Counted from the first letter of the whole stretch, positions 49,732 through 61,365 are shown. The stretch is 62,964 bases of DNA, filler included, from Octopus bimaculoides (GCF_001194135.2; 5 parts of 4 records of this genome joined end to end with filler, not necessarily neighbours in it); one strand, 5' to 3'. Notes: generated from the letters alone by a model not told the origin. Translations and numbers: made by a program.

Positions 49732-51421
49732 TAGCTGAGATACTCGGCGTGGCTCGGGATTAAAATGTCATAGTTTGTATATAATATATTATAGCTTTGT
49801 TGAAACAGGTGATATGGGAAAGTGCAGCATTGACAACAAAATATTTGTGGAGTAAATGATAAGCTAATTCGATTAAGCAACATGCTATGCGTTCGTTTGG
49901 AGTATTTCAGGCTCTAACCTGTCATGGAAAATTGGGGGTGGAGGTTATGTGATTTTTGAACACACCGAAAATCTGTCAGTGGATATACTCTCTTTTGCAG
50001 CAGTCTACGCTGTGTCTAACACTACCCATCGTCTGAAATTTTGACACCGCCTTCGGGTTTGATGTCCTACATCACTCATAAAGTAAATTTAGAGGAACTG
50101 TAGTTGTTCATTTGTGGGTAACAGGGAACCAATGAGGTGATTGACTTGTCCTTGAACTTTGACGTCAGTGTAAATTCATGTTTAAGTATCTTATTAGATG
50201 CAGTAAACGATGTCATTTGAAATGCAGAGTTGTATTATCTGATATTGTTAAGAAAATCCTTTGATTGGATGTAAGTGCCTTCTAAAAGATCCATAAGATA
50301 TTGAGAAAGAGCTGGTAGTGCTGGTAATCTTACCTGACCGCCTGAGCAGCACATGCCATTTGTTTCATTTGAAAATTTTAAAGCTCTACAGAAACGACAG
50401 TTTGTGTTTAGCATACCAATTTGGACAGGGTTATCATTTTAATAAGAATGGGATGAATATCCGAAAGCAGCTCCAGGAGTTGTGAAGAACGAATTGGTAC
50501 ATAGTCTGTTTCTGAGAGCTATTCTATTGGACCTCTGTCTAATCATTAAAACATTGATTTAATGATCCAGCATTAAGAGCAGCATGCATTTGTTGATTTT
50601 GGGAAAGTCTCATCTCCCTTCTCTCTTGAGAATCCGTCTGACGTGCTGCAGCATCCCTTTACTGATCTTGAGAAAATCTCATCTCGCTTCTCTCTTCAGA
50701 CACTCGCCTTCGGTTTTCTACAATCCTCCTTGCTTTATACTTGTTTCTGGACAAATTACTATTTTCTTTGGTGGCATATATTTTTCAATATTGTAAACAA
50801 AAAATTATGAACATAGAAAAAATTACACATTGATCCCTATTTCTGTAAGCAGTTGTATGTATATAGTATCTTCTTATTTTTGCATGCAGTATAAATTGAC
50901 CAAAGAGAAGCACATGTATGAACTGTTATTTTAACGGTAAACGCTACAATAATTATTACAGGTAAATTTCTTTATATATATATATATATATATTAAGCAC
51001 ATGTATTAAATATTAATTTAAGGGTAAATATGTAACTGTAAATACTTTGCAACCTTGCAACTGCTGCGATAATAATTAACTGGTAATTGAACGGTAAATG
51101 TGTATTTTTATATACCTTGGACCTGACACCTCATTTTTTTTTGTCAAGAGTTTGACTTCCAGCCGTTCGTTATGTCAGTCAACACATAGACTGACACACC
51201 ATTCTGCTGTGGTGGCCGTAAAGGCAGAAAGTTGCCGATGCGTAATGTAGTTCATTGGAATGCATAAGGAATATATATATATAGGACAGACTTCTTTCGA
51301 AGTTGAAAATTTTTTTGACTCATGACACTGCATGGACCTTAAGTAAGGCATGTGTAAAATATGAATGAAATCGGTTGTGTAGTTCTCGAGTTTTAGGGAT
51401 TCACACAGACAGACAGACACA
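49732..51421 (-). mobile_element. Internally deleted Helitron retaining a decayed RepHel N-terminus (about 50020-50777)
   Basis: MPPKK start; CRFCRALKFSNETNGMCCSGGQVRLP; FLNNIR*YNSAFQMTSF; KVQGQVNHLIGSLLP; QFL*IYF; 3' end hairpin (49743-49758) 8 nt from (C)TAG; 5' end in N gap. Confidence 0.85.
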
Positions 51422-52179
51422 NNNNNNNNNNNNNNNNNNNNNNNNNNNNNNNNNNNNNNNNNNNNNNNNNNNNNNNNNNNNNNNNNNNNNNNNNNNNNNN
51501 NNNNNNNNNNNNNNNNNNNNNNNNNNNNNNNNNNNNNNNNNNNNNNNNNNNNNNNNNNNNNNNNNNNNNNNNNNNNNNNNNNNNNNNNNNNNNNNNNNNN
51601 NNNNNNNNNNNNNNNNNNNNNNNNNNNNNNNNNNNNNNNNNNNNNNNNNNNNNNNNNNNNNNNNNNNNNNNNNNNNNNNNNNNNNNNNNNNNNNNNNNNN
51701 NNNNNNNNNNNNNNNNNNNNNNNNNNNNNNNNNNNNNNNNNNNNNNNNNNNNNNNNNNNNNNNNNNNNNNNNNNNNNNNNNNNNNNNNNNNNNNNNNNNN
51801 NNNNNNAATTTTTACTCGGTAGTCCACACTGAAGAGGCTCAAGGATTAAATTTTCCAAAAGCTGAAACCCGGGTGTGTGGATGTCCTAAACGGCATAATC
51901 TTTTATAGCTGTGCTTTTGAATATATTAATTCTTTCCGTTTCCTCGCCTACTGTTATTTCTGTTATCTTGGTGCTGTACTGTGGTTTAATTAAGACTTTA
52001 GCTCTTATTTCTAGCAGGTGTATGCTTTTATGCATCCTTATAATTTATAGCTAAATAATGCTATTTGCCTGCGAACCACCCATGTTACTACTGTTGATAC
52101 CATCAATTTAAAATTTTATCCACAGATGATATTAGCAGTAGTGACATCTTATTTCAAATTATAGAGTTTGAATGTTTTG

Positions 52180-52266
<87 letters not shown>

Positions 52267-53005
52267 ACATACACGCATACAAACACACACACAAACACAC
52301 ACACATATATAAATAAGAAATAGTGATACAACGAGGCATCAATGTTTGCTGGAAATACCAGTCAATAACGATACGACGCTATGTAAAGCTTCGTTGAAAT
52401 GTATACTGGCAAAGATGTATGCGGGCAGCGAACTTAAAATTTTTTTCCTCTTATATCTAGGAAGAACATCGGAAAATGGACTACCTAGAATGGATAATCT
52501 AGGACCCGAGTTTCGGACTTTTCAAAATACGTTTGTTATCATAAATTTGATTAGTCCCCACCAGCTAGATTCCCCTGAGACGAAAATTTATAATATCGTT
52601 ACAGTATATTCGGCTGAACGTCTAGCCGTTAACAGAACCGAGATTAGTGAAAATGTTTTCTATAAAATTTTTAAATATCATTGCAATACAATATATTTAC
52701 GGTGCTTTATTTGATTGGAAAGTGATCCTATTGTATTGTATTGCAATGATATCTAAAATTTATATATATATANNNNNNNNNNNNNNNNNNNNNNNNNNNN
52801 NNNNNNNNNNNNNNNNNNNNNNNNNNNNNNNNNNNNNNNNNNNNNNNNNNNNNNNNNNNNNNNNNNNNNNNNNNNNNNNNNNNNNNNNNNNNNNNNNNNN
52901 NNNNNNNNNNNNNNNNNNNNNNNNNNNNNNNNNNNNNNNNNNNNNNNNNNNNNNNNNNNNNNNNNNNNNNNNNNNNNNNNNNNNNNNNNNNNNNNNNNNN
53001 NNNNN

Positions 53006-53070
<65 letters not shown>

Positions 53071-53126
53071 TTCACTTGTGTTATTTCGGTATCCCTTCAT
53101 ATTACAATCTTGAAATATGTACTTAC

Positions 53127-53297
53127 CAGATTCTGGGAAATTTTCATTCTTTGGGTTGAGAACATTGTTACTAACGGATTCATGTCTAGGTGTAGATACA
53201 GGAATACTCTTAGAAGTAGTCGCTGTTTGCTTCGTAGTTGTCGGGAAATTTTGTTTCTTTGATGCCATTGTTGCGTTTTTTGCCACCCCTTCATTCA
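53127..53297 (-). CDS. Phase 1-1 exon (171 nt) encoding a Ser/Thr-rich mucin-like stalk
   Basis: Acceptor CTAAT...TTTTGCAG|, donor G|GTAAGT; NEGVAKNATMASKKQNFPTTTKQTATTSKSIPVSTPRHESVS...; 15 of 57 residues S/T; NAT sequon. Confidence 0.65.
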
Positions 53298-53700
53298 CTG
53301 CAAAATCATTTGTATCAAAATTAGTTTCTTTTTTAAATATTCAAGAGGAGAAAGCTCAAGATCTTTGAATTTTAAGAAGGTAATCTAACATTCATATTCT
53401 TTCTGAAGAAAATTAAAGGGCTTCATTTGAAAATTGCAGATGTGTGTGAAATTGAACTGATTTGCTTACAACTTTTTCTATGGACTTACCAAATTATTTC
53501 CCTAATGTCATTACATGCCATAGTACTGAATTTTTACGCTGACACTCTGATTGCTTATTTAAATGAAAGGCTGAATATAGCTGTAGTTGCTCCCAAGGTA
53601 TAGATGGTAACAGCTGTTGTTGTTACTGTGTCTACTGTCGTCCGTCCACCCCTCCCTGTTTTTTTTTCTGAACAGTGTGGTCGATTTCAACTATATCAGC

Positions 53701-55095
53701 ATTAAATAATAATTGAGAGATGCTTTCGTTTTTAGATTAGAACATCAGATTACCGTAGGATATGCCTATAGTATGATTAGAATTGGGTACTGCTAATATA
53801 AAACATTTTCAACACCACCTTATACGCTGCATTAGACTCTCATTAATATATTAAACTCTCATTAATATATTTTCTGCGCTTCGTTTATCAAACGTGAAAG
53901 ACTGGAAATCAACTCTGACGAAATCGAAACTAAATATGTAAATTAGGCTTATTGTAATCACCTTGAAATTATTGAATATTTACTTGTCAATATCTGTTTT
54001 AATTCATTGTCTCTTTGTCTGAAGCATGTCGGGTAACAACTTTGAGGGGACATCGTTAGCTAAAGCTTTGTACATATGTACAGGAATGCAACATTCTGCT
54101 CATTTTAGGATTAATAATTAGTTTTTTTTCTGAAATTTCAATCAGTATTTAGGTATTCCACGCACAAGTCATGCCTCCATTGAAAAGTTTAATTCTTTTG
54201 ACTAAATCACCTGAGATCACTCGTTTTATGCTATTTTAAAGTGTTTTCAAGTGATCATATTCTAAAGTGATCATATTTAGATTGAAACCTTCCATCATAA
54301 TATTTTTTACATAACTTTAGTTAACAATGTATCCTCTTAGATATCCTTCGATCTAATAAAAGTCACAGTTAATTTTCGCTCAAGGCACACGCTATCGTCA
54401 ACAGAGAAAGGAAAAAAGGAAAAAAAGGAAACGTGTCGTATAATATTGTTATTAATAAAGACTATATCTGAAAACAAGAGTTTTGACACAAGTTTTAATT
54501 TTTATCATAGGTATATTCAATGATGGCAAAACTGTGTAAACAGTAGCAATATACGTAGATTTTCTGTTAGAAGAGTGTAGTAAGTAGGTTGAATAAGGTG
54601 TAGATTATCTTAATAAGATGTGGTAGATTTAAATTCTATCAGCATTAAATGCATGTCACCCACGCCTATACACATACAGGCATACACATGCATAGTATAG
54701 TTAAGAAACAATTATAACAGTTTTCGTCTTTAAATATCATTCACGAGGCTTCAGTTAAATTGAGGTTTTGAATGACGAAGGTTCATGACTGAAACGTTAT
54801 TCCTCTTTCTTATAAGAAACCAGTCCCTTAGTTTCTTTAAATCTTACTGTTTATGGTAGAAAGCACTTATTCACGGCTCTACGCAATAGAATATAACTTG
54901 GAATCATGTGATTGAGGTGCGAATTTCTCAAACGTACAACCATGCCAATGTTGCGTATAAAGTGTTGAAAATGTTTTATATTGATAAAATTTTTACTTAT
55001 TAGCAGTACCCAATTCTAATCATACTATAGGCATATCCTACGGTAATCTGATGTTCTAATCTAAAAACGAAAGCACCTCTCAATTATTATTTAAT
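53701..55095. mobile_element. About 1.4-kb element bounded by long inverted repeats (non-autonomous DNA transposon?)
   Basis: 53701-53797 versus the reverse complement of 54999-55095: one mismatch in 97 bp; similarity continues about 35 bp further after an 18-bp indel; no transposase recognised. Confidence 0.6.
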
Positions 55096-56168
55096 TATTA
55101 TTCAGAGTACAACCAATCACAACTCCGATAATTGATAGAAGGAAGTAAACACCAAAGCTGGGAGCCTGCTAGACGCCACGACTAAAAATACTAATCTATT
55201 GCGACAATAGAAAAATAAAGGGCAGGAAACCCCCTAAGCAACAAATGAGGGGCACAAAAAAAAAGAGTGAATCCTTACGAAAGACGTACAAGATACTGAA
55301 AATTCCTCACATAAAAGCGTCCACTCTCATGGAGTACCTGAACTATGCCTTACTTAGAAAGACAATCTAAACCCAATTCGATTAAAGTCTAATAGACAGC
55401 TAAATAACTACTGCTCTGATTAAAAAGTCAATGAGACACGAATTCTAGATGGATAATAAAGAATTAGTTGGCGATCTTTTAACAGCTGAGGGATTATTCT
55501 TTTGAGGGTAGAAAACTGCCCTTTCAGTTTCGGCTGGAACCGAAATTGCTCAGGAGTAATTTTTGAGAACTCAGTTCGAGAAATTCATCAGAGCGGAAGG
55601 TGGTCAAACATATAGAGTTCCCTAATTCTACTTACGAGGCAGTTTCTTACTCTATGTTTGAGGGTTATCTTTATTTGCTTTCATTCGTATTTGTTTTTGT
55701 AAAAAAAAATTGCCTAAATGTATTGTATTACTCTTCTTTCTGTACCGTAGTAATCAAATAAAGTCATGATGAAAGGCGTTCTGGTCATGGCAATTCCACG
55801 CACGCACACACTCGCACGCGCGTGTGCACACATACACACTCCTCCTCTCTGCATGCACTTTCTATTTTATTTAAGTGTCGAAGAGCTGAATTTGTTACTT
55901 TGGCGATTGTCATTCCCGTTAGGGATGGTGTGAATTTTGACTTAGCTACGGAAGGTGATTACTTTTGGTCACATGAAAAAAATCCCCAAAAGGATTTACA
56001 TCCTTATAGGATTCGTACTATCAGATCTTATGGCAAACAGCACAACAATTCCAGCAACGAATATAAAATATAATTTTTTTTCAGCTACATGTTTATCAAT
56101 TTTGCCAATCAGTCATTACAAATTCTCTTGAATTTCAATGATGGAGAAAATTGAACTTTGATACTTAC

Positions 56169-56432
56169 TAGTCGGACAATCATAAACGAATCTCAGACGA
56201 GGTTTCTTTATTTGACCTTGTGTTCCACAGCATGCTGAAACTGAACTTATAAAGTTAATGTCACATTCTTTTACATTTTCGCACTTTGTATATATTTCAG
56301 ATTTTGTTTGCATCCATAGACGTTTGTTAACAGGGGATGGACATGTAACTGTATCAATTTCTATGCTTTTTCCTTTGTCACATCTTGGATTGTTACCTCG
56401 GCACATGTTAGTTACTTTGTTCTGAACAACAC
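56169..56432 (-). CDS. Phase 1-1 exon (264 nt) encoding an 8-Cys extracellular domain, remotely SUEL/Gal-lectin-like
   Basis: Strong acceptor (TTCTAAT...TTTTGCTTTTTACTTCAG|) and donor A|GTAAGT; open frame VVQNKVTNMCRGNNPRCDKGKSIEIDTVTC...TKCENVKECDINF...CC...PRLRFVYDCPT; spacing C-x6-C-x12-C-x19-C-x5-C-x10-CC-x16-C. Confidence 0.75.
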
Positions 56433-56614
56433 CTGAAGTAAAAAGCAAAAGTAAAAATTAGAATAATATAAAATGCTCCTGTACAATGGGACTTTATAGA
56501 TTCATTTTCTTTCAACTATAACATAAAGAAGGGTACGGCCGAGTTCACGAATCCTCGAATACTATTAATACTTTTCATATTTATCCCTAAGATTTTAACC
56601 ATACTATGATTTAC

Positions 56615-56649
56615 GCAAAACTAAATAGTGTGGGATATTTGGTCCGATT
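56615..56649 (-). CDS. Possible 35-nt linker exon (QIGPNIPHYLVLR), phase 2 to 1
   Basis: TTTTAG| ... TGC|GTAAAT; restores frame between the signal-peptide and Cys-rich exons; weak sites, could be chance. Confidence 0.2.
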
Positions 56650-57114
56650 CTAAAATTTATATCCACTCGTGTGCTTATGGTGATCATGCATATTGCTTAA
56701 GAAAGGGCGAGTCCAGATGTAAAAGCCGTTTCTAGTGTTTCTGCTATTTTATGTTACAAGGTTCACGGATAAACTGGTTAGATGCAAGAAAACATCACTT
56801 CCACCAGTGATATAAAAATTAACCAACATTATTTCACCTTAAGATTACTACTGCTCCGTAAGATGAAGATTCAAATGACGGATTTACATTCCTGGGTCCT
56901 TTTTCATGCCTTTATTTTAAATGATCTAGTCAGTGAAAGCTTTTCCACTAAAATCTTTACATTCATTATAACGTCTAGTAAGTATGAATCAGTGCTGAGT
57001 TGACATCTTCACACAGGTTTTAGCCGCCACTTTAGATTTTAATCAAAAAGGAAAGGATAGTTGATCTAGTTGCGTCACATTACTGATTTCATGACAAAGA
57101 TACTTAATACTTAC

Positions 57115-57170
57115 TGGTTTCCTCCATATGAGGAAACCAGTATAACTATAGAAAGAAGCATTGTTATCAT
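57115..57170 (-). CDS. Candidate signal-peptide exon (MITMLLSIVILVSSYGGN) of a secreted/surface Cys-rich protein
   Basis: ATG followed by a hydrophobic stretch; donor CA|GTAAGT at 57115/57114; acceptor TTGTTGCCACAG| at 57194. Ends in phase 2, so an intervening exon is required. Confidence 0.5.
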
Positions 57171-57777
57171 TTTAGTACAATATACAGTTATAAACTGTGG
57201 CAACAATGTATAATTGATGTGAGCCGAATTCAAATTCTTACGTCAAAGAAGATATGATATATCAGGCTAGCATATACATGTTCGCGTCTAAAACATTTAC
57301 TTTGCGTACTTCACACCGTTAGTAATAGATACCATGTGGGGGAATAGAAATAATTTTAACAGCAATATCCATACGTATTTCCTTTTGCCAATGAGCTGGT
57401 TGTTCAAAAGTTGCAAGTCATCTTAGTATGCTATTGTTATTTTCTTTTACTAATCCTACGAGGATTAAAGAACATCTCGTTTTTATTCAGTATGTAGCAA
57501 ACTGTAACTTAATATGTTAAGCTTTTTATTTTGGAACTGTACTGTTTTCCTACTCGCTAATCTATACGATGTTACGTTATGCCATATTAAGTGGCATTAT
57601 TTAAGTCGCAATATTAGTATGATCACTATTTCGAGAGATAAAGTTTTTCCAAGTTTGATTTATTCTAGATTTGCACATATGGTGAAATTCCATGAATTGT
57701 CCTCGTGAGTTAATGGTTTTTAATACACAAACTATCACAATACATAAAAATTGTCTCAGGTACATGAAAACAAAAGA

Positions 57778-57780
<3 letters not shown>

Positions 57781-57842
<62 letters not shown>
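57781..57842 (+). repeat. (TG)n microsatellite
   Basis: Direct reading. Confidence 0.95.
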
Positions 57843-57844
<2 letters not shown>

Positions 57845-59299
57845 AGACAGACAGAGGGAGAGAGAGTGAGAATTTGGGAACGGCAGACAAGGTAAACATT
57901 GTTACTCTTATTTTTGTTGCTGTTTTAGGATAACCTCTTCAAATTAAAAGAACATATGGTACAAAGTTAACTGGCAAAAACCTAGAAACAAGCCACAAGT
58001 AAAACATCCTATATATGCCGATATCCATATATCTCCTAATATATTTATTCTTATATTTGTCTATATTACACGTACGGTTGGATAGGTTTGATTCAACATC
58101 AGCGCTTCTGTAGAGCAAGAATGTGAAATATTTAGTCACTTTATTTTACCTAAATGTATGAATTTTTGCTGTAAGAAATCTGGTTAAGGTGTATCATTGG
58201 TGGCGCAGTAGATAAGAGTTTTGGAGATTTGCGTTTCTCCTGTGAGAAGAATCTAATCCATATAAAACTCAAGAAAAGGGATTAACAGTCTTACAAATAT
58301 ATATTTCTACTGAATAGTTGTTTTGTTGCAAAGAACTTCAAAGACTACACTAATCCATTTCAACTATTCCTATGAAAATGATAAACGTTTCAGAATAATC
58401 TTACTCGTGACTTGGGTGAACGCTTATCAGAAGGAACGATTTTCATGTTTCTCGGTACACTAAATGACATTAAGTAAATAGACTTTAATAAAGGATGAAA
58501 AGCCATTTCAAAGGTTCAATTCGTTGGGTGGCAACTTCTTACCGTAAGTGTACATAGAAGTAGTTTAAAATACGTGAGTTTTGAGTTTAGTGTCGTCCAA
58601 ATGGTGAAGTAACTATAGTTAGTTACATAATGTCTATATATTGGAAACATGGAAAGGGGCTGGTTTTGAGAAACAGATACTTCACATTACTTAATTTCTG
58701 GCTACTCATTTCTCTGATGGAGTTGTGTGTTGATGCAATGCAAATAGATATCAAATGTATTAGGATAATTTTGATTTGTATTTTAATTATCCAAAAGAGA
58801 AAGGTTTTACAGGCCCAGTTTTCTGTAAGTTTGAGTATTATTTAAGTATTATCATTCGTAGAAGCAGACAGTACTCGCATATTAAGACAAAATATATATT
58901 TAGATATACATAAGACATATGGTGTTTCGGAGTAATACTCTCTACTAATAACTAAGTAGATAAAATGAAGCTAAAAATCACCTCAGAATTAGACTTATAT
59001 AATCTTTTAAAATTATTCTTTTATGAACTAGTTTGAATTCAGTGAAAGTTTCTGAGCCGTAATGAGAATAAACAATGGATTAACTGAAGTGTGCTACGCA
59101 CAAAATTCAAACCAGAAGTAACTTCACTATGAAGTTGGGTTAGAAGGTCATTCAAGAAGTTGTTTACAACGAAGTGTGTTCTGCATGTCTTATTCTCCTT
59201 TGGTTAACTATGCCAATACATATATCAATAGATTAATGTCGATGGATGGATAACTAGCTCTCGGAATCCCGATAAAAATACATCGTTAGTAATTTAGGG

Positions 59300-59480
59300 A
59301 CCAGCATTGACCATCAGTAAGAAGATAAAACTGCAGTTATACTAATCTATTGTCATATCAACAACCATCTGCGCCTGTGAAACCTGGAAGAAGGCAATGA
59401 AGATCGTCCTAGGCATCTCTCATCGGGACAGAGTGATAAACAAAGAGATAATGAAAAGAGCTGGCATGAGAAGTTTGTAG
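59300..59480 (+). mobile_element. RTE-like LINE fragment
   Basis: IKLQLY*SIVISTTICACETWKK / LGISHRDRVINKEIMKRAG. Confidence 0.55.
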
Positions 59481-59589
59481 GACGTGTGTAAATATATTCG
59501 TGTGTTTATACATACATACATGCATACATACATACACGTTCTGTACTATGTATGTATGTATGTATGTTTGTATGTCTATTCTATTTTTT

Positions 59590-60285
59590 AATTATTATAA
59601 ATCTCCCACTGAGGAAGGAGCTGATTTCCAACAAAGATACAAAGCTCCATCTTTGGGATGTAGTGACTACAGAGAAATTCACATTTGGAACTTGAGAAAA
59701 GTCTTACATATTTTTACTGTTCCACTCACAGATTGCACTTGTAATATTAGCTGGTCGATTTCTCTTTCTGAAAATCCCAGTTTATCAAGATACTCCTTTA
59801 AGCATTTACTAACAAAACCTAGTGCTCCAATTATTATTGGTATGAATATGAATTCATAGTCTGGATATAGAAGCTGGAGGTTTTGAAGCAGTTGCCCATT
59901 GATATCCTCTTTTTCTTTGATTTTCAAAGAGATCTTTATATCTGCAGGGCAGCTGAACTCTACGACGGTACATACTTTTGCCCCTTTGTCCCAAACAGCA
60001 AAATCAGGCCTGTTATATTTACATTTGATAGAAGTTTTGATGGGAATATTCCACCAGTATTCCTTGAGTTTATGAATGTATTTCATAACAGGGAGACTTT
60101 CTAAGTTTATTTTAGGACAGTCTTTTTTGCAGATTGCATTGTAATTTGTTTTAGCGACATCATCGTGTCGCATAGGGCGGTAGTACCGTCACAACATTTT
60201 AGGACAACTGCTAATCAGATGCACGATGTCTTCCACAGAAACATGACATAGCCTATACATGCAGTTGTACCTTCCGTTAGTTGTT
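59590..60285 (-). mobile_element. RLE-type (R4-like) LINE 3' fragment, different subfamily from 33901-35041
   Basis: RLCHVSVEDIVHLISSC (decayed CCHC), RHDDVAK, YWWN..NRPDFAVWD..VEFSCP..KEK, PIIIGALG. Confidence 0.85.
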
Positions 60286-60299
60286 AGAGCACTAGCCTG

Positions 60300-60400
60300 T
60301 TATCAATTTCATCGGTATGTCTGATGTAGTGTCCAGCTAATCTCATCCTTCTATGCTGTCGAAGCGATCGCAGAGCAACGTGAGATGATGATCAAAACGC
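60300..60400 (-). mobile_element. RTE LINE C-terminal fragment
   Basis: RRMRLAGHYIRH motif. Confidence 0.6.
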
Positions 60401-60419
60401 ACCGCCGCCACCTCATCTA

Positions 60420-61000
60420 GGAATAATGATGAAGATATTTAAAACATATGATGTTCCACCAAGAATTCTGAGAGCAATAAGTAAGCTGTATGAGAACACC
60501 AGAGCGAAAGTGATTACTCCTGATAGAGAAACGGAATATTTTGAAGTCAAAGCTGGAGTATTGCAAGGCGACACGCTAGTACCTTATCTTTTCGCCATCG
60601 TTCTCGACTATGTAATGCGTAGAACGTACGAGAGCAAGGAAGAAGATTCAAACTGCATAGGCAAAGAAGTAGACGGTATCAAGCAGTAACAGTAACTGAC
60701 CTAGACTATGCTGATGACCTGGCATTACTAACAGAGAGGACAAATCAAGTACAGGAGGTGCTGAGCAGATTAGAGTAGGAATCAGGGAAGGTAGGATTAT
60801 ACTGTAACGCAAAAACAGAGCTGCAAGTATTCAACAACGAAATGCCTATGTCAGTGAAAGTGAGAGACTGTAAGTCGCTCAAGGTAGCTGAAAATTTCAA
60901 ATACCTTGGTACGTGGTCACAAAGTACTGAAAAGAAAAAAAAATCTATATTAACCCTATTGACATTAATTCTGCTGCCATTAATCAGGACATGAAAGCAC
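60420..61000 (+). mobile_element. RTE-clade LINE RT core fragment
   Basis: GVLQGDTLVPYLFAIVLDYVMR; after frameshift DLDYADDLALL (60707-60718 = YADD); FKYLG. Confidence 0.9.
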
Positions 61001-61013
61001 GTCATAACGGTAA

Positions 61014-61365
61014 TCTTAATATATAAAGCTGAAGTTGTGTGTCTGTGTGAAGCCTTTTTAAAAGTTTATAGAAATTCACATTTTCCACTTTTTCGTTAAA
61101 ATTTTTACATCAATGGAATTTTCTCGATGTGAACTTTCCAGTGCAGTAATTATATTTTTAAAATTCCGTTTACTTTGTGTGATTTAAGGGAGATTTGGCT
61201 GTTGTCTCTAGCAAATTTTATATTTCTTCCCTTCTACCTGGAACAGCGTTCTTACACACGCGCTCAACAGAGAGAGAAAGTGATACAACGTCATAGATTA
61301 AACTTTCTTCTCAGTATTCTTTACTTATTTTTCATAACATTGATACGTAAAAACACACACAACCA
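61014..61365 (+). mobile_element. Possible Helitron 5' end
   Basis: A|TCTTAATATATAAAG followed by GTGTGTCTGTGTGAA, similar to the 5' region of the other Helitrons. Confidence 0.3.

What the first reader, a model, noticed from the sequence alone, without database searches (positions are those of the whole stretch)
53127..57194. Hidden spliced gene for a secreted/surface protein: signal peptide + divergent 8-Cys SUEL-like domain + mucin stalk
Seen: three minus-strand segments with canonical splice sites, two of them symmetric phase 1-1 exons with GTAAGT donors: an 88-codon exon with 8 Cys and a 57-codon exon with 26% S/T. Known: phase 1-1 exons are typical of extracellular modules; SUEL/Gal_Lectin domains have 8 Cys, G-x-x-I-x-I after C2, C-x5-C and a terminal L-x-V-x-Y-x-C, all echoed here (GKSIEI, CENVKEC, LRFVYDC). 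The sugar-binding YGR and DPC motifs are absent. Inference: a lineage-specific lectin-fold receptor, adhesion or skin/mucus protein with altered ligand. No transmembrane or final exon was found; it may lie in N gaps or beyond the spacer.
Basis: partly seen in the sequence, partly recalled or inferred. Interest (0 to 1): 0.75.

Follow-up and report, generated by a model that had tools for sequence, protein, structure and literature searches.

The report
Two exons of annotated octopus receptor gene
The two larger segments are real coding exons (exons 2 and 3) of an already annotated but uncharacterised Octopus bimaculoides gene for a cephalopod-only membrane protein, while the proposed signal-peptide exon and mini-exon are probably chance look-alikes inside an intron.

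Summary
The 264-nt Cys-rich exon (56432-56169, minus strand) and the 171-nt Ser/Thr-rich exon (53297-53127) are real. Their translations are 100% identical to residues 16-103 and 105-161 of RefSeq XP_014774539.1 / XP isoform X1 (LOC106872169, Octopus bimaculoides). The predicted junction codon (A|TG = Met104) is also correct. So the gene is not hidden: it is annotated (UniProt A0A0L8H8H8, "CUB domain-containing protein") but uncharacterised, and it spans about 126 kb.

The annotated, conserved signal-peptide exon (MRNYLLIIQIAGILT) lies outside the piece.

The full protein is a type I membrane protein. In order it has a signal peptide, Cys domain D1, a Ser/Thr linker, a second Cys domain D2, a weak CUB-like domain, a stalk, a transmembrane helix and a very conserved cytoplasmic tail. 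Relatives were found only in coleoid cephalopods.

The SUEL-lectin idea is weakly supported at best. There is no Pfam or PDB sequence hit, and AlphaFold models were unusable (pLDDT 33-40). A joint D1+D2 profile does match the C-terminal half of SUEL domains (hhalign P=3.8e-4; 0 of 300 shuffles reach it). The YGR, DPC and KYL motifs are absent.

The parts
56169..56432 (-). Coding exon 2 of LOC106872169 (O. bimaculoides). It has 264 nt and is phase 1-1. It encodes residues G16-T103, the 8-Cys domain D1.
   Evidence: 100% identity to XP_014774539.1 residues 16-103. AG acceptor and GTAAGT donor are present. Against the related octopod contig L001: dN/dS 0.50, differences by codon position 7/7/16, one codon-aligned 3-nt indel, all 8 Cys kept.
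53127..53297 (-). Coding exon 3, 171 nt, phase 1-1. It encodes M104 (split codon A|TG) to G161 (split). This is the Ser/Thr-rich (26%) linker between D1 and D2, with one N-x-T site (NAT).
   Evidence: 100% identity to XP_014774539.1 residues 105-161, with the junction Met as predicted.
53298..56168 (-). Intron 2 (2871 nt). It contains a 114-nt inverted-repeat pair (53701-53814 / 54982-55095).
   Evidence: It lies between the two confirmed exons. The repeat was found.
56433..61365 (-). 3' part of intron 1; the annotated first coding exon is not in the piece.
   Evidence: No match to MRNYLLIIQIAGILT in any frame of the piece. Candidate exon 1 is out of phase, and such candidates are common by chance. 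RVT_1 fragments were seen.
49732..53126 (-). 5' part of intron 3, with two N gaps. Exon 4 (GFCEADICYEKPYC...) was not found here.
   Evidence: tblastn of XP_014774539.1 and XP_029636312.1 finds nothing beyond residue 161/162 in the piece. The gene range is about 126 kb.

Best explanation
Shown: window 56432-56169 and 53297-53127 (minus strand) are coding exons 2 and 3 of the annotated Octopus bimaculoides gene LOC106872169 (proteins XP_014774539.1, 656 aa, and isoform X1, 736 aa). The gene spans about 126 kb, so the piece holds only these two exons plus intron sequence.

Shown from the full-length protein and its relatives: the product has the layout of a type I membrane protein.
- An N-terminal hydrophobic leader, encoded outside the piece.
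- D1, an 8-Cys module encoded by exon 2.
- A Ser/Thr-rich, poorly conserved linker encoded by exon 3.
- D2, a 7-Cys module whose core cysteines align with D1.
- A weakly CUB-like domain.
- A Ser/Thr-rich stalk, 80 aa longer in isoform X1.
- One very conserved TM helix.
- A roughly 215-aa cytoplasmic tail, the most conserved part (100% O. bimaculoides vs O. sinensis, 79% vs Argonauta). It contains DDDVFRDLQHFYVNGDDYALV and the C-terminus DSDVLEWTKGFNLAV.

Inferred: it acts as a cell-surface receptor or adhesion molecule.
- The faster-evolving D1, D2 and CUB-like modules would bind an extracellular ligand. That ligand is probably a protein rather than a sugar, because the YGR, DPC and KYL sugar-site motifs of SUEL lectins are missing.
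- The invariant tail would couple to intracellular partners through its tyrosine motifs and hydrophobic C-terminus.
- D1 and D2 are most likely a tandem duplication of a small disulfide-bonded module. It may derive from the SUEL/rhamnose-binding-lectin fold with the YGR-C3 loop deleted.

For: Identity with the annotated gene:
- tblastn gives 100% over both exons, and the junction codon is Met.
- Names and accessions come; isoform X1; the 126-kb gene range in GCA_001194135.2.

Exon reality beyond annotation:
- The orthologous octopod genomic contig L001 keeps the ORF, the splice sites and all 8 Cys. dN/dS is 0.50, with an excess of third-position changes and a codon-aligned indel.
- A decapodiform Logan contig (L002, 2.3 kb) carries one continuous ORF from leader through D1, linker, D2 and CUB-like domain to the TM helix. 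That makes it a spliced mRNA.

Architecture and conservation:
- Alignments are; per-domain identities are.
- For the CUB-like domain, the top three PDB profile hits are MASP-1/MASP-3 CUB domains at E 0.0076-0.15. UniProt names the protein 'CUB domain-containing protein'.

D1 and D2:
- D1 vs D2 by hhalign gives P=0.044, with the core Cys in register.
- The joint D1+D2 profile vs a SUEL alignment taken from PDB chains scores 25.1 (P=3.8e-4). Column-shuffled controls give mean 10.8, maximum 20.0, and 0 of 300 reach the real score.

Taxonomic restriction: an exhaustive profile search of 1.84 billion representatives and two word-index searches found only coleoid cephalopod proteins.

- It is absent from X1, X2 and every orthologue.
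- The annotated leader is conserved in O. sinensis, O. vulgaris and Argonauta.
- It is in the wrong phase.
- Seven similar candidates occur by chance in the piece.
- The mini-exon donor is lost in L001.
Against: - No direct RNA-seq junction evidence from O. bimaculoides could be inspected here. The exon structure rests on RefSeq and UniProt models, cross-species conservation and a decapodiform mRNA contig.
- Exon 2 is barely more conserved at the nucleotide level (88.3%) than nearby intron sequence (84.8-87.9%). Purifying selection on D1 is therefore weak (dN/dS 0.5).
- The function is pure inference. No Pfam domain is detected in any family member, and no paper mentions the gene.
- The signal peptide was not tested with a dedicated predictor.
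- The SUEL link fails database-wide sequence searches. D1 alone is not significant (P=0.11).
- The structure models are unusable.
Confidence: 0.9

Rival explanations
1. D1 (and D2) is a novel cephalopod-specific disulfide-rich fold unrelated to SUEL lectins. On this reading the shared C-x5-C and L-x-V-x-Y-x-C patterns are convergence or chance among small Cys-rich modules.
For: - No Gal_Lectin hit in Pfam even at E<=10 for any of 6 family members.
- No SUEL chain appears in a PDB-wide profile search with D1+D2 or in a single-sequence search.
- D1 alone against SUEL gives P=0.11.
- The invariant SUEL residues A-x-Y-G-R, D-P-C and K-Y-L-E are all absent.
- The third SUEL cysteine and about 20 residues around it have no counterpart.
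- Foldseek finds nothing. SUL-I appears only at rank 26 with E=8.8.
Against: - The pre-specified directed profile-profile test is significant when D1 and D2 are pooled (P=3.8e-4; 0 of 300 column shuffles; reversed control scores 12.2).
- The aligned register places C5, C6, C7 and C8 correctly.
- A greedy extension also puts C1, C2 and G-x-x-I-x-I in register.
- The low-confidence AF2 secondary structure has a strand at SIEI, a helix before C5 and a terminal strand at LRF. This follows the SUEL order of elements (the SUEL topology is from my own knowledge).
Confidence: 0.5
2. The reader's segment 57170-57115, with or without the 35-nt mini-exon, is a genuine alternative first exon. It would give an isoform with a different signal peptide.
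For: - ATG, an open frame, a hydrophobic stretch (MITMLLSIVILVSS) and a consensus GTAAGT donor are present.
- In the related contig L001 the ATG and frame are kept through an in-frame 3-nt deletion. A GTATCA donor there would give phase 1, which is in frame with exon 2.
- With the mini-exon, the window version is also in frame.
Against: - It is not in RefSeq isoforms X1 or X2 of O. bimaculoides, nor in the O. sinensis, O. vulgaris or Argonauta models or the decapodiform mRNA. All of these use the conserved MRNY/MWNY leader.
- In the window the direct splice is out of frame.
- The mini-exon donor is AT in L001, so the two species would need different structures.
- Its conservation (88.5%) equals that of the flanking non-coding DNA (89.2%).
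- Three equally hydrophobic ATG-ORF-GTRAGT candidates occur by chance in 11 kb.
Confidence: 0.06
3. The window copy is a non-functional paralogue or pseudogene fragment rather than the expressed gene.
For: - Only two exons are present.
- Constraint on exon 2 is weak: dN/dS 0.5, and nucleotide identity is similar to the introns.
Against: - Both exons are 100% identical to the RefSeq protein, with intact splice sites and frames.
- The other exons are missing simply because the gene spans 126 kb and the piece is 11.6 kb.
- No second copy of D1 turned up in any protein search.
Confidence: 0.02

Closest known systems
RefSeq LOC106872169 (Octopus bimaculoides; XP_014774539.1 isoform X2 and the 736-aa isoform X1; UniProt A0A0L8H8H8). 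Orthologues: LOC115211776 (O. sinensis XP_029636312.1), O. vulgaris CAI9722334.1 and an Argonauta hians model.
   Same: This is the same gene. Window exons 2 and 3 translate to residues 16-161 with 100% identity.
   Different: Nothing differs in sequence. The databases give no function beyond 'uncharacterized' or 'CUB domain-containing'. They do not annotate D1 or D2.
SUEL-type / rhamnose-binding lectin domain (Pfam Gal_Lectin PF02140), for example latrophilin RBL (PDB 2JX9, 6SKE, 8DJG) and sea-urchin SUL-I (5H4S).
   Same: - A small module of about 80-90 aa with 8 Cys.
- C-x(6-8)-C followed by G-x-x-I-x-[IV].
- A helix-like segment ending in C-x5-C.
- A terminal L-x-[VF]-x-Y-x-C.
- The pooled D1+D2 profile aligns to the C-terminal half with P=3.8e-4.
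- Latrophilin shows that such domains can sit on receptors and bind proteins rather than sugars (my own knowledge).
   Different: - No Pfam hit.
- The invariant A-x-Y-G-R, D-P-C and K-Y-L-E motifs are absent.
- About 20 residues, including the third Cys, are missing.
- D1 has a CC doublet, and D2 lacks the fourth Cys.
- Fold and sugar binding are untested.
CUB-domain membrane receptors and proteases (CUB, Pfam PF00431), for example the MASP-1/MASP-3 and C1r CUB2 domains.
   Same: - Residues about 244-345 carry the CUB N-terminal signature: C-x(9)-EG-x-I-x-S-x-DYP-x(9)-C-x-F-x-I.
- The three best PDB profile hits are CUB domains, at E 0.0076-0.15.
- UniProt names the protein accordingly.
   Different: - The Pfam CUB model does not reach a reportable score in any of the 6 members.
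- Only the first half of the domain aligns.
- The second CUB disulfide is not evident.
EVA-1 / EVA1C-type membrane proteins, which have two SUEL domains followed by a TM helix (recalled from memory, not tested).
   Same: The overall layout is similar: two tandem SUEL-like modules on a single-pass membrane protein.
   Different: The octopus protein also has a CUB-like domain and an unrelated tail. No sequence comparison was made, and no FAM176 or Gal_Lectin Pfam hit was seen.

Membership tests
Annotated gene LOC106872169 (O. bimaculoides) | The exon translations are identical to the RefSeq protein and occur in the same order. | tested here: met
   Residues 16-103 match 56432-56170 and residues 105-161 match 53295-53125, both at 100%. 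The junction Met104 comes from A|TG.
SUEL-type lectin domain (Pfam Gal_Lectin PF02140) | The sequence matches the family HMM at or above the gathering score. | tested here: not met
   No Gal_Lectin hit even at E<=10 for the exon-2 peptide, the joined peptide, or 6 full-length family members.
SUEL-type lectin domain (Pfam Gal_Lectin PF02140) | The conserved motifs A-x-Y-G-R, D-P-C and K-Y-L-E are present. These columns are invariant in the PDB-derived alignment. | tested here: not met
   The invariant columns of A7 are listed. D1 and D2 have none of them, and only L-x-[VF]-x-Y-x-C remains.
SUEL-type lectin domain (Pfam Gal_Lectin PF02140) | Eight cysteines sit at the canonical positions C1-C8. 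| tested here: inconclusive
   C5, C6, C7 and C8 align with confidence. C1 and C2 align only under greedy extension. C3 has no counterpart. D1 has an extra C next to C7, and D2 lacks C4.
SUEL-type lectin domain (Pfam Gal_Lectin PF02140) | Profile-profile similarity to bona fide SUEL domains. | tested here: inconclusive
   D1 alone gives P=0.11 and D2 alone P=0.045 over 13 columns. D1+D2 pooled gives P=3.8e-4, score 25.1, against a shuffled maximum of 20.0 (0 of 300), and covers only the C-terminal half. A PDB-wide HMMER profile search returns no SUEL chain.
SUEL-type lectin domain (Pfam Gal_Lectin PF02140) | The alpha/beta RBL fold. | tested here: inconclusive
   AlphaFold2 gave mean pLDDT 33.4 for D1 and 39.8 for D1-linker-D2. 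Foldseek against PDB found no match with E<2.5.
SUEL-type lectin domain (Pfam Gal_Lectin PF02140) | Binding of galactose or rhamnose. | not testable with these tools
   This needs a glycan array or binding assay.
CUB domain (Pfam PF00431) | The sequence matches the family HMM at or above the gathering score. | tested here: not met
   No CUB hit was reported for any of the 6 members at E<=10.
CUB domain (Pfam PF00431) | Similarity to solved CUB domains, and the G-x-I-x-S-P-x-YP...C-x-[YW]-x-I signature. | tested here: inconclusive
   A profile of residues 234-362 gives MASP-1 and MASP-3 CUB chains as its three best PDB hits, at E 0.0076, 0.01 and 0.15. Only the N-terminal half aligns. The signature EGHIISIDYPKMMPPTSSVCNFKI is visible.
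Mucin-like domain | A long Pro/Thr/Ser-rich segment, usually made of tandem repeats and heavily O-glycosylated. | tested here: inconclusive
   Exon 3 is 26% S+T over only 58 aa and has no tandem repeats. Its sequence is poorly conserved but remains S/T-rich in the decapodiform orthologue. Glycosylation cannot be tested here.
Type I single-pass membrane protein | An N-terminal leader and one TM helix, with Cys-rich modules on the N-terminal side. | tested here: met
   The leader is MRNYLLIIQIAGILT. The hydrophobic segment IITGLIAGIVILACLVIILLTALIASM is followed by KRRRR. All Cys modules lie upstream of it. No dedicated SignalP or TMHMM run was possible.

The most novel reading that the evidence does not exclude
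D1 and D2 would define an unrecognised, coleoid-cephalopod-specific 'mini-SUEL' module. This would be a rhamnose-binding-lectin fold that has lost the YGR/C3 sugar-binding loop and rewired its disulfides. It would be duplicated in tandem and fused to a CUB-like domain and a highly conserved tyrosine-motif tail. The result would be a lineage-specific surface receptor with a protein ligand.
Probability: 0.3. Interest if true: 0.45.

Novelty: already known. Interest (0 to 1): 0.22.

Why it matters
As a gene discovery it does not matter, because the locus is already in RefSeq and UniProt.

There is modest residual value. The protein belongs to a small family seen only in coleoid cephalopods, with no Pfam domain and no literature. 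Its cytoplasmic tail is extremely conserved, while its ectodomain modules evolve faster. If D1 and D2 prove to be stripped-down SUEL folds, they would add a new structural variant of a lectin domain re-used for receptor function. They would also give a candidate cephalopod-specific signalling receptor worth localising in neural, sucker or skin tissue.

Tried and rejected
- Pfam scans of the exon-2 peptide, the joined peptide and all family members found nothing relevant.
- A PDB sequence search with D1 gave no hit. With the full protein and with family profiles it gave only weak CUB hits.
- The D1+D2 profile against PDB gave only random hits: a phage RNA polymerase, scytovirin and hexokinase.
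- The first word-index homologue search with the 88-aa exon returned only the Logan genomic ORF P0001. It missed the RefSeq proteins, which the exhaustive profile search then found.
- Hits P0003 and P0005 from that search are tandem-repeat ORFs scored over many stretches. I rejected them as false positives.
- AlphaFold2 of D1 alone and of D1-linker-D2 gave pLDDT 33 and 40. The Foldseek result is therefore meaningless and also empty.
Isoform X2 is not on record.
- Searches for the annotated first exon in the piece found nothing.
- Literature searches for gene, protein and SRA identifiers returned no papers.
- I considered that exon 2 might be part of a transposon. I rejected this: there is no second copy in the piece, and it is part of a conserved multi-exon protein.


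Full report
**Observation.**
- I read the minus strand of 53000-57300 and listed stop-to-stop frames over the piece 49732-61365.
- The two larger segments are exactly as described.
  - 56432-56169 is 264 nt. It follows ...ttacttcAG and is followed by GTAAGT. It is phase 1-1 and encodes 88 residues with 8 Cys.
  - 53297-53127 is 171 nt. It follows ttttgcAG and is followed by GTAAGT. It is phase 1-1 and encodes 57 residues with 26% Ser+Thr.
- The third segment, 57170-57115, begins with ATG and ends at CA|GTAAGT.
  - It is 56 nt long (phase 2), so it cannot be joined in frame to the phase-1 Cys exon.

**What it is.**
- Pfam and a PDB sequence search gave nothing for the Cys exon.
- A word-index protein search found a single 114-aa ORF from a 1.4-kb Logan contig, L001.
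  - L001 is genomic DNA of a related octopod. It aligns with window 57272-55959.
- An exhaustive profile search of 1.84 billion representative proteins then hit a 656-aa protein at E=7e-49.
  - Cluster look-up identified that protein as XP_029636312.1 (O. sinensis LOC115211776 isoform X2).
  - Its cluster mates are CAI9722334.1 (O. vulgaris) and XP_014774539.1 (O. bimaculoides LOC106872169 isoform X2; UniProt A0A0L8H8H8, 'CUB domain-containing protein').
- tblastn of XP_014774539.1 against the piece gives 100% identity for residues 16-103 (56432-56170) and for residues 105-161 (53295-53125).
- The window is therefore O. bimaculoides, and the finding is exons 2 and 3 of an annotated gene.
- Isoform X1 (736 aa) differs only by 80 extra residues in the stalk.
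- The gene occupies about 126 kb in GCA_001194135.2. This explains why no further exon lies in this 11.6-kb piece.

**Independent support for the exons.**
- Against L001, exon 2 keeps both splice sites, the open frame and all eight Cys.
  - It has one codon-aligned 3-nt indel, and differences by codon position are 7/7/16.
  - dN/dS is 0.50, with dS 0.21.
- Constraint is weak. Nucleotide identity is 88.3% in the exon against 84.8% in intron 1 and 76% in intron 2.
- A decapodiform Logan contig of 2.3 kb (L002) carries one uninterrupted ORF running leader-D1-linker-D2-CUB-like-stalk-TM.
  - That is only possible for a spliced mRNA of a gene with these introns.
  - A second ORF on the same contig encodes the conserved tail.

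**The proposed first exon.**
- All models use a different leader: MRNYLLIIQIAGILT in O. bimaculoides, MWNYLLIIQIAGILT in O. sinensis and O. vulgaris, and MWNYLFIIQIAGILA in Argonauta. The decapodiform mRNA has its own N-terminal hydrophobic leader, MWNWAILFLFILHADA.
- This leader is absent from the piece in all frames, so the true exon 1 lies upstream of 61365.
- In L001 the mini-exon donor is AT instead of GT. The candidate first exon there would have a different length and phase.
- ATG-ORF-GTRAGT candidates occur seven times in this piece, three of them with a comparable hydrophobic stretch.
- I therefore treat exon 1 and the mini-exon as chance features inside intron 1. I leave about a 6% chance that they form an unannotated alternative start.

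**The protein.** Alignment of six orthologues and per-domain statistics give this layout:

| Part | Residues | Notes |
|---|---|---|
| Leader | 1-15 | encoded outside the piece |
| D1 | 16-103 | 8 Cys, exon 2 |
| Linker | 104-161 | 26% S+T, one NAT site, exon 3 |
| D2 | 162-236 | 7 Cys |
| CUB-like domain | about 240-345 | weak CUB similarity |
| Stalk | about 346-492 | S/T-rich |
| TM helix | about 493-522 | IITGLIAGIVILACLVIILLTALIASM, then KRRRR |
| Cytoplasmic tail | about 523-736 | about 215 aa |

- Between O. bimaculoides and O. sinensis the TM helix and tail are 100% identical. D1 and the CUB-like domain are 84% identical.
- Against Argonauta the tail is 79% identical and D1 is 66%.
- The tail motifs DDDVFRDLQHFYVNGDDYALV and the C-terminus DSDVLEWTKGFNLAV are kept even in Acanthosepion.
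- This is the pattern of a receptor with a constrained intracellular interface and a faster-evolving ligand-binding exterior.
  - That functional reading is inference.
  - The tyrosine motifs (YVNG, YALV) and the hydrophobic C-terminus as SH2 or PDZ-type sites are suggestions from general knowledge, not tests.
- A profile of the third domain finds MASP-1 and MASP-3 CUB domains as its three best PDB hits (E 0.0076, 0.01, 0.15). Pfam's CUB model reports nothing.
- The exhaustive search and two word-index searches, one with a six-sequence profile, found relatives only in coleoid cephalopods.

**The SUEL-lectin hypothesis.** The negative results are these:
- No Gal_Lectin hit for any member.
- No SUEL chain in PDB-wide sequence or profile searches.
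- AlphaFold2 models at pLDDT 33 and 40.
- No Foldseek match below E=2.5, with SUL-I only at rank 26 and E=8.8.

To test the idea directly, I recovered real SUEL domain sequences from PDB chains: latrophilin 1-3 RBL and the three domains of SUL-I. I aligned them and ran hhalign.
- D1 alone gives P=0.11, though with C5-C8 in the expected register.
- D2 alone gives P=0.045 over 13 columns.
- D1 against D2 gives P=0.044 with the core Cys in register. MAFFT aligns all six core Cys of D1 and D2.
- The pooled D1+D2 profile against SUEL scores 25.1 (P=3.8e-4, 38 columns, C5 to C8).
  - 300 column-shuffled SUEL alignments gave mean 10.8, sd 2.4 and maximum 20.0. The reversed alignment gave 12.2.
- A greedy extension puts C1, C2 and G-x-x-I-x-I in register. 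It deletes about 20 residues that contain A-x-Y-G-R and the third Cys.

So there is a real but partial resemblance, limited to the C-terminal half, and every sugar-site motif is missing. I rate 'derived from the SUEL fold' and 'unrelated novel Cys module' as roughly equally likely. Membership of Gal_Lectin as defined is not met.

**Verdict.**
- It is wrong that the gene is hidden, and wrong about the first exon.
- It is unproven on the fold.
- The gene is already annotated, so novelty is low. The remaining interest is an uncharacterised cephalopod-only receptor family with unassigned Cys modules.

Noticed in passing
window 60384-60991 (+): Three overlapping frame-shifted ORFs carry reverse-transcriptase motifs (YFEVKAGVLQGDTLVPYLF..., DLDYADDLALL). 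Pfam RVT_1 gives E=0.0014 and 0.21. This looks like a decayed non-LTR retrotransposon inside intron 1 of the gene.
   Followed up: partly
window 60188-59682 (-): This is the longest ORF of the piece (169 aa, ...NRPDFAVWDKGAKVCTVVEFSCPADIK...IIGALGFVSK...). It has no Pfam hit. From memory it resembles ORFs associated with invertebrate retroelements. It lies on the strand opposite to the neighbouring RT fragments.
   Followed up: partly
window 53701-53814 and 54982-55095: A 114-nt inverted repeat pair, 93% complementary and 1167 nt apart, lies inside intron 2. It is either two opposed copies of a short interspersed element or the ends of a 1.4-kb DNA element. A further 32-nt direct repeat sits at 53676-53707 and 54619-54650.
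   Followed up: no
window 50438-50238 (-): A 67-aa ORF contains CRFCRALKFSNETNGMCCSGGQVRLP...FLNNIR. From memory this resembles the N-terminal region of Helitron-type transposase proteins. Pfam gave no hit, so this is only a lead.
   Followed up: partly
window 52182-52305, 53006-53068, 57778-57841; N runs 51422-51806 and 52773-53005: There are long microsatellites: (TA)38 followed by (AC)n, (AG)31 abutting an assembly gap, and (GT)32. The two N gaps in intron 3 indicate an older draft assembly.
   Followed up: no
L002 (Logan SRR27666066 contig) 108-1718 and 2033-2320: The decapodiform mRNA contig ends its main ORF just after the TM helix (...NAAHF*). It carries the conserved tail (DDVFRDVSHFYVNGDDYALV) in a second downstream ORF. 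This suggests a retained intron or an alternative isoform with a truncated tail.
   Followed up: partly
With a GTATCA donor it would be in phase with exon 2, unlike in the window. This is probably coincidence but is unexplained.
   Followed up: partly
Proteins P0003 (928 aa) and P0005 (314 aa): These are tandem-repeat ORFs with periods of about 61 aa. They scored against the D1 profile only by summing many weak repeats. They are evidently unrelated repeat-DNA translations and show how such profiles attract repeats.
   Followed up: partly
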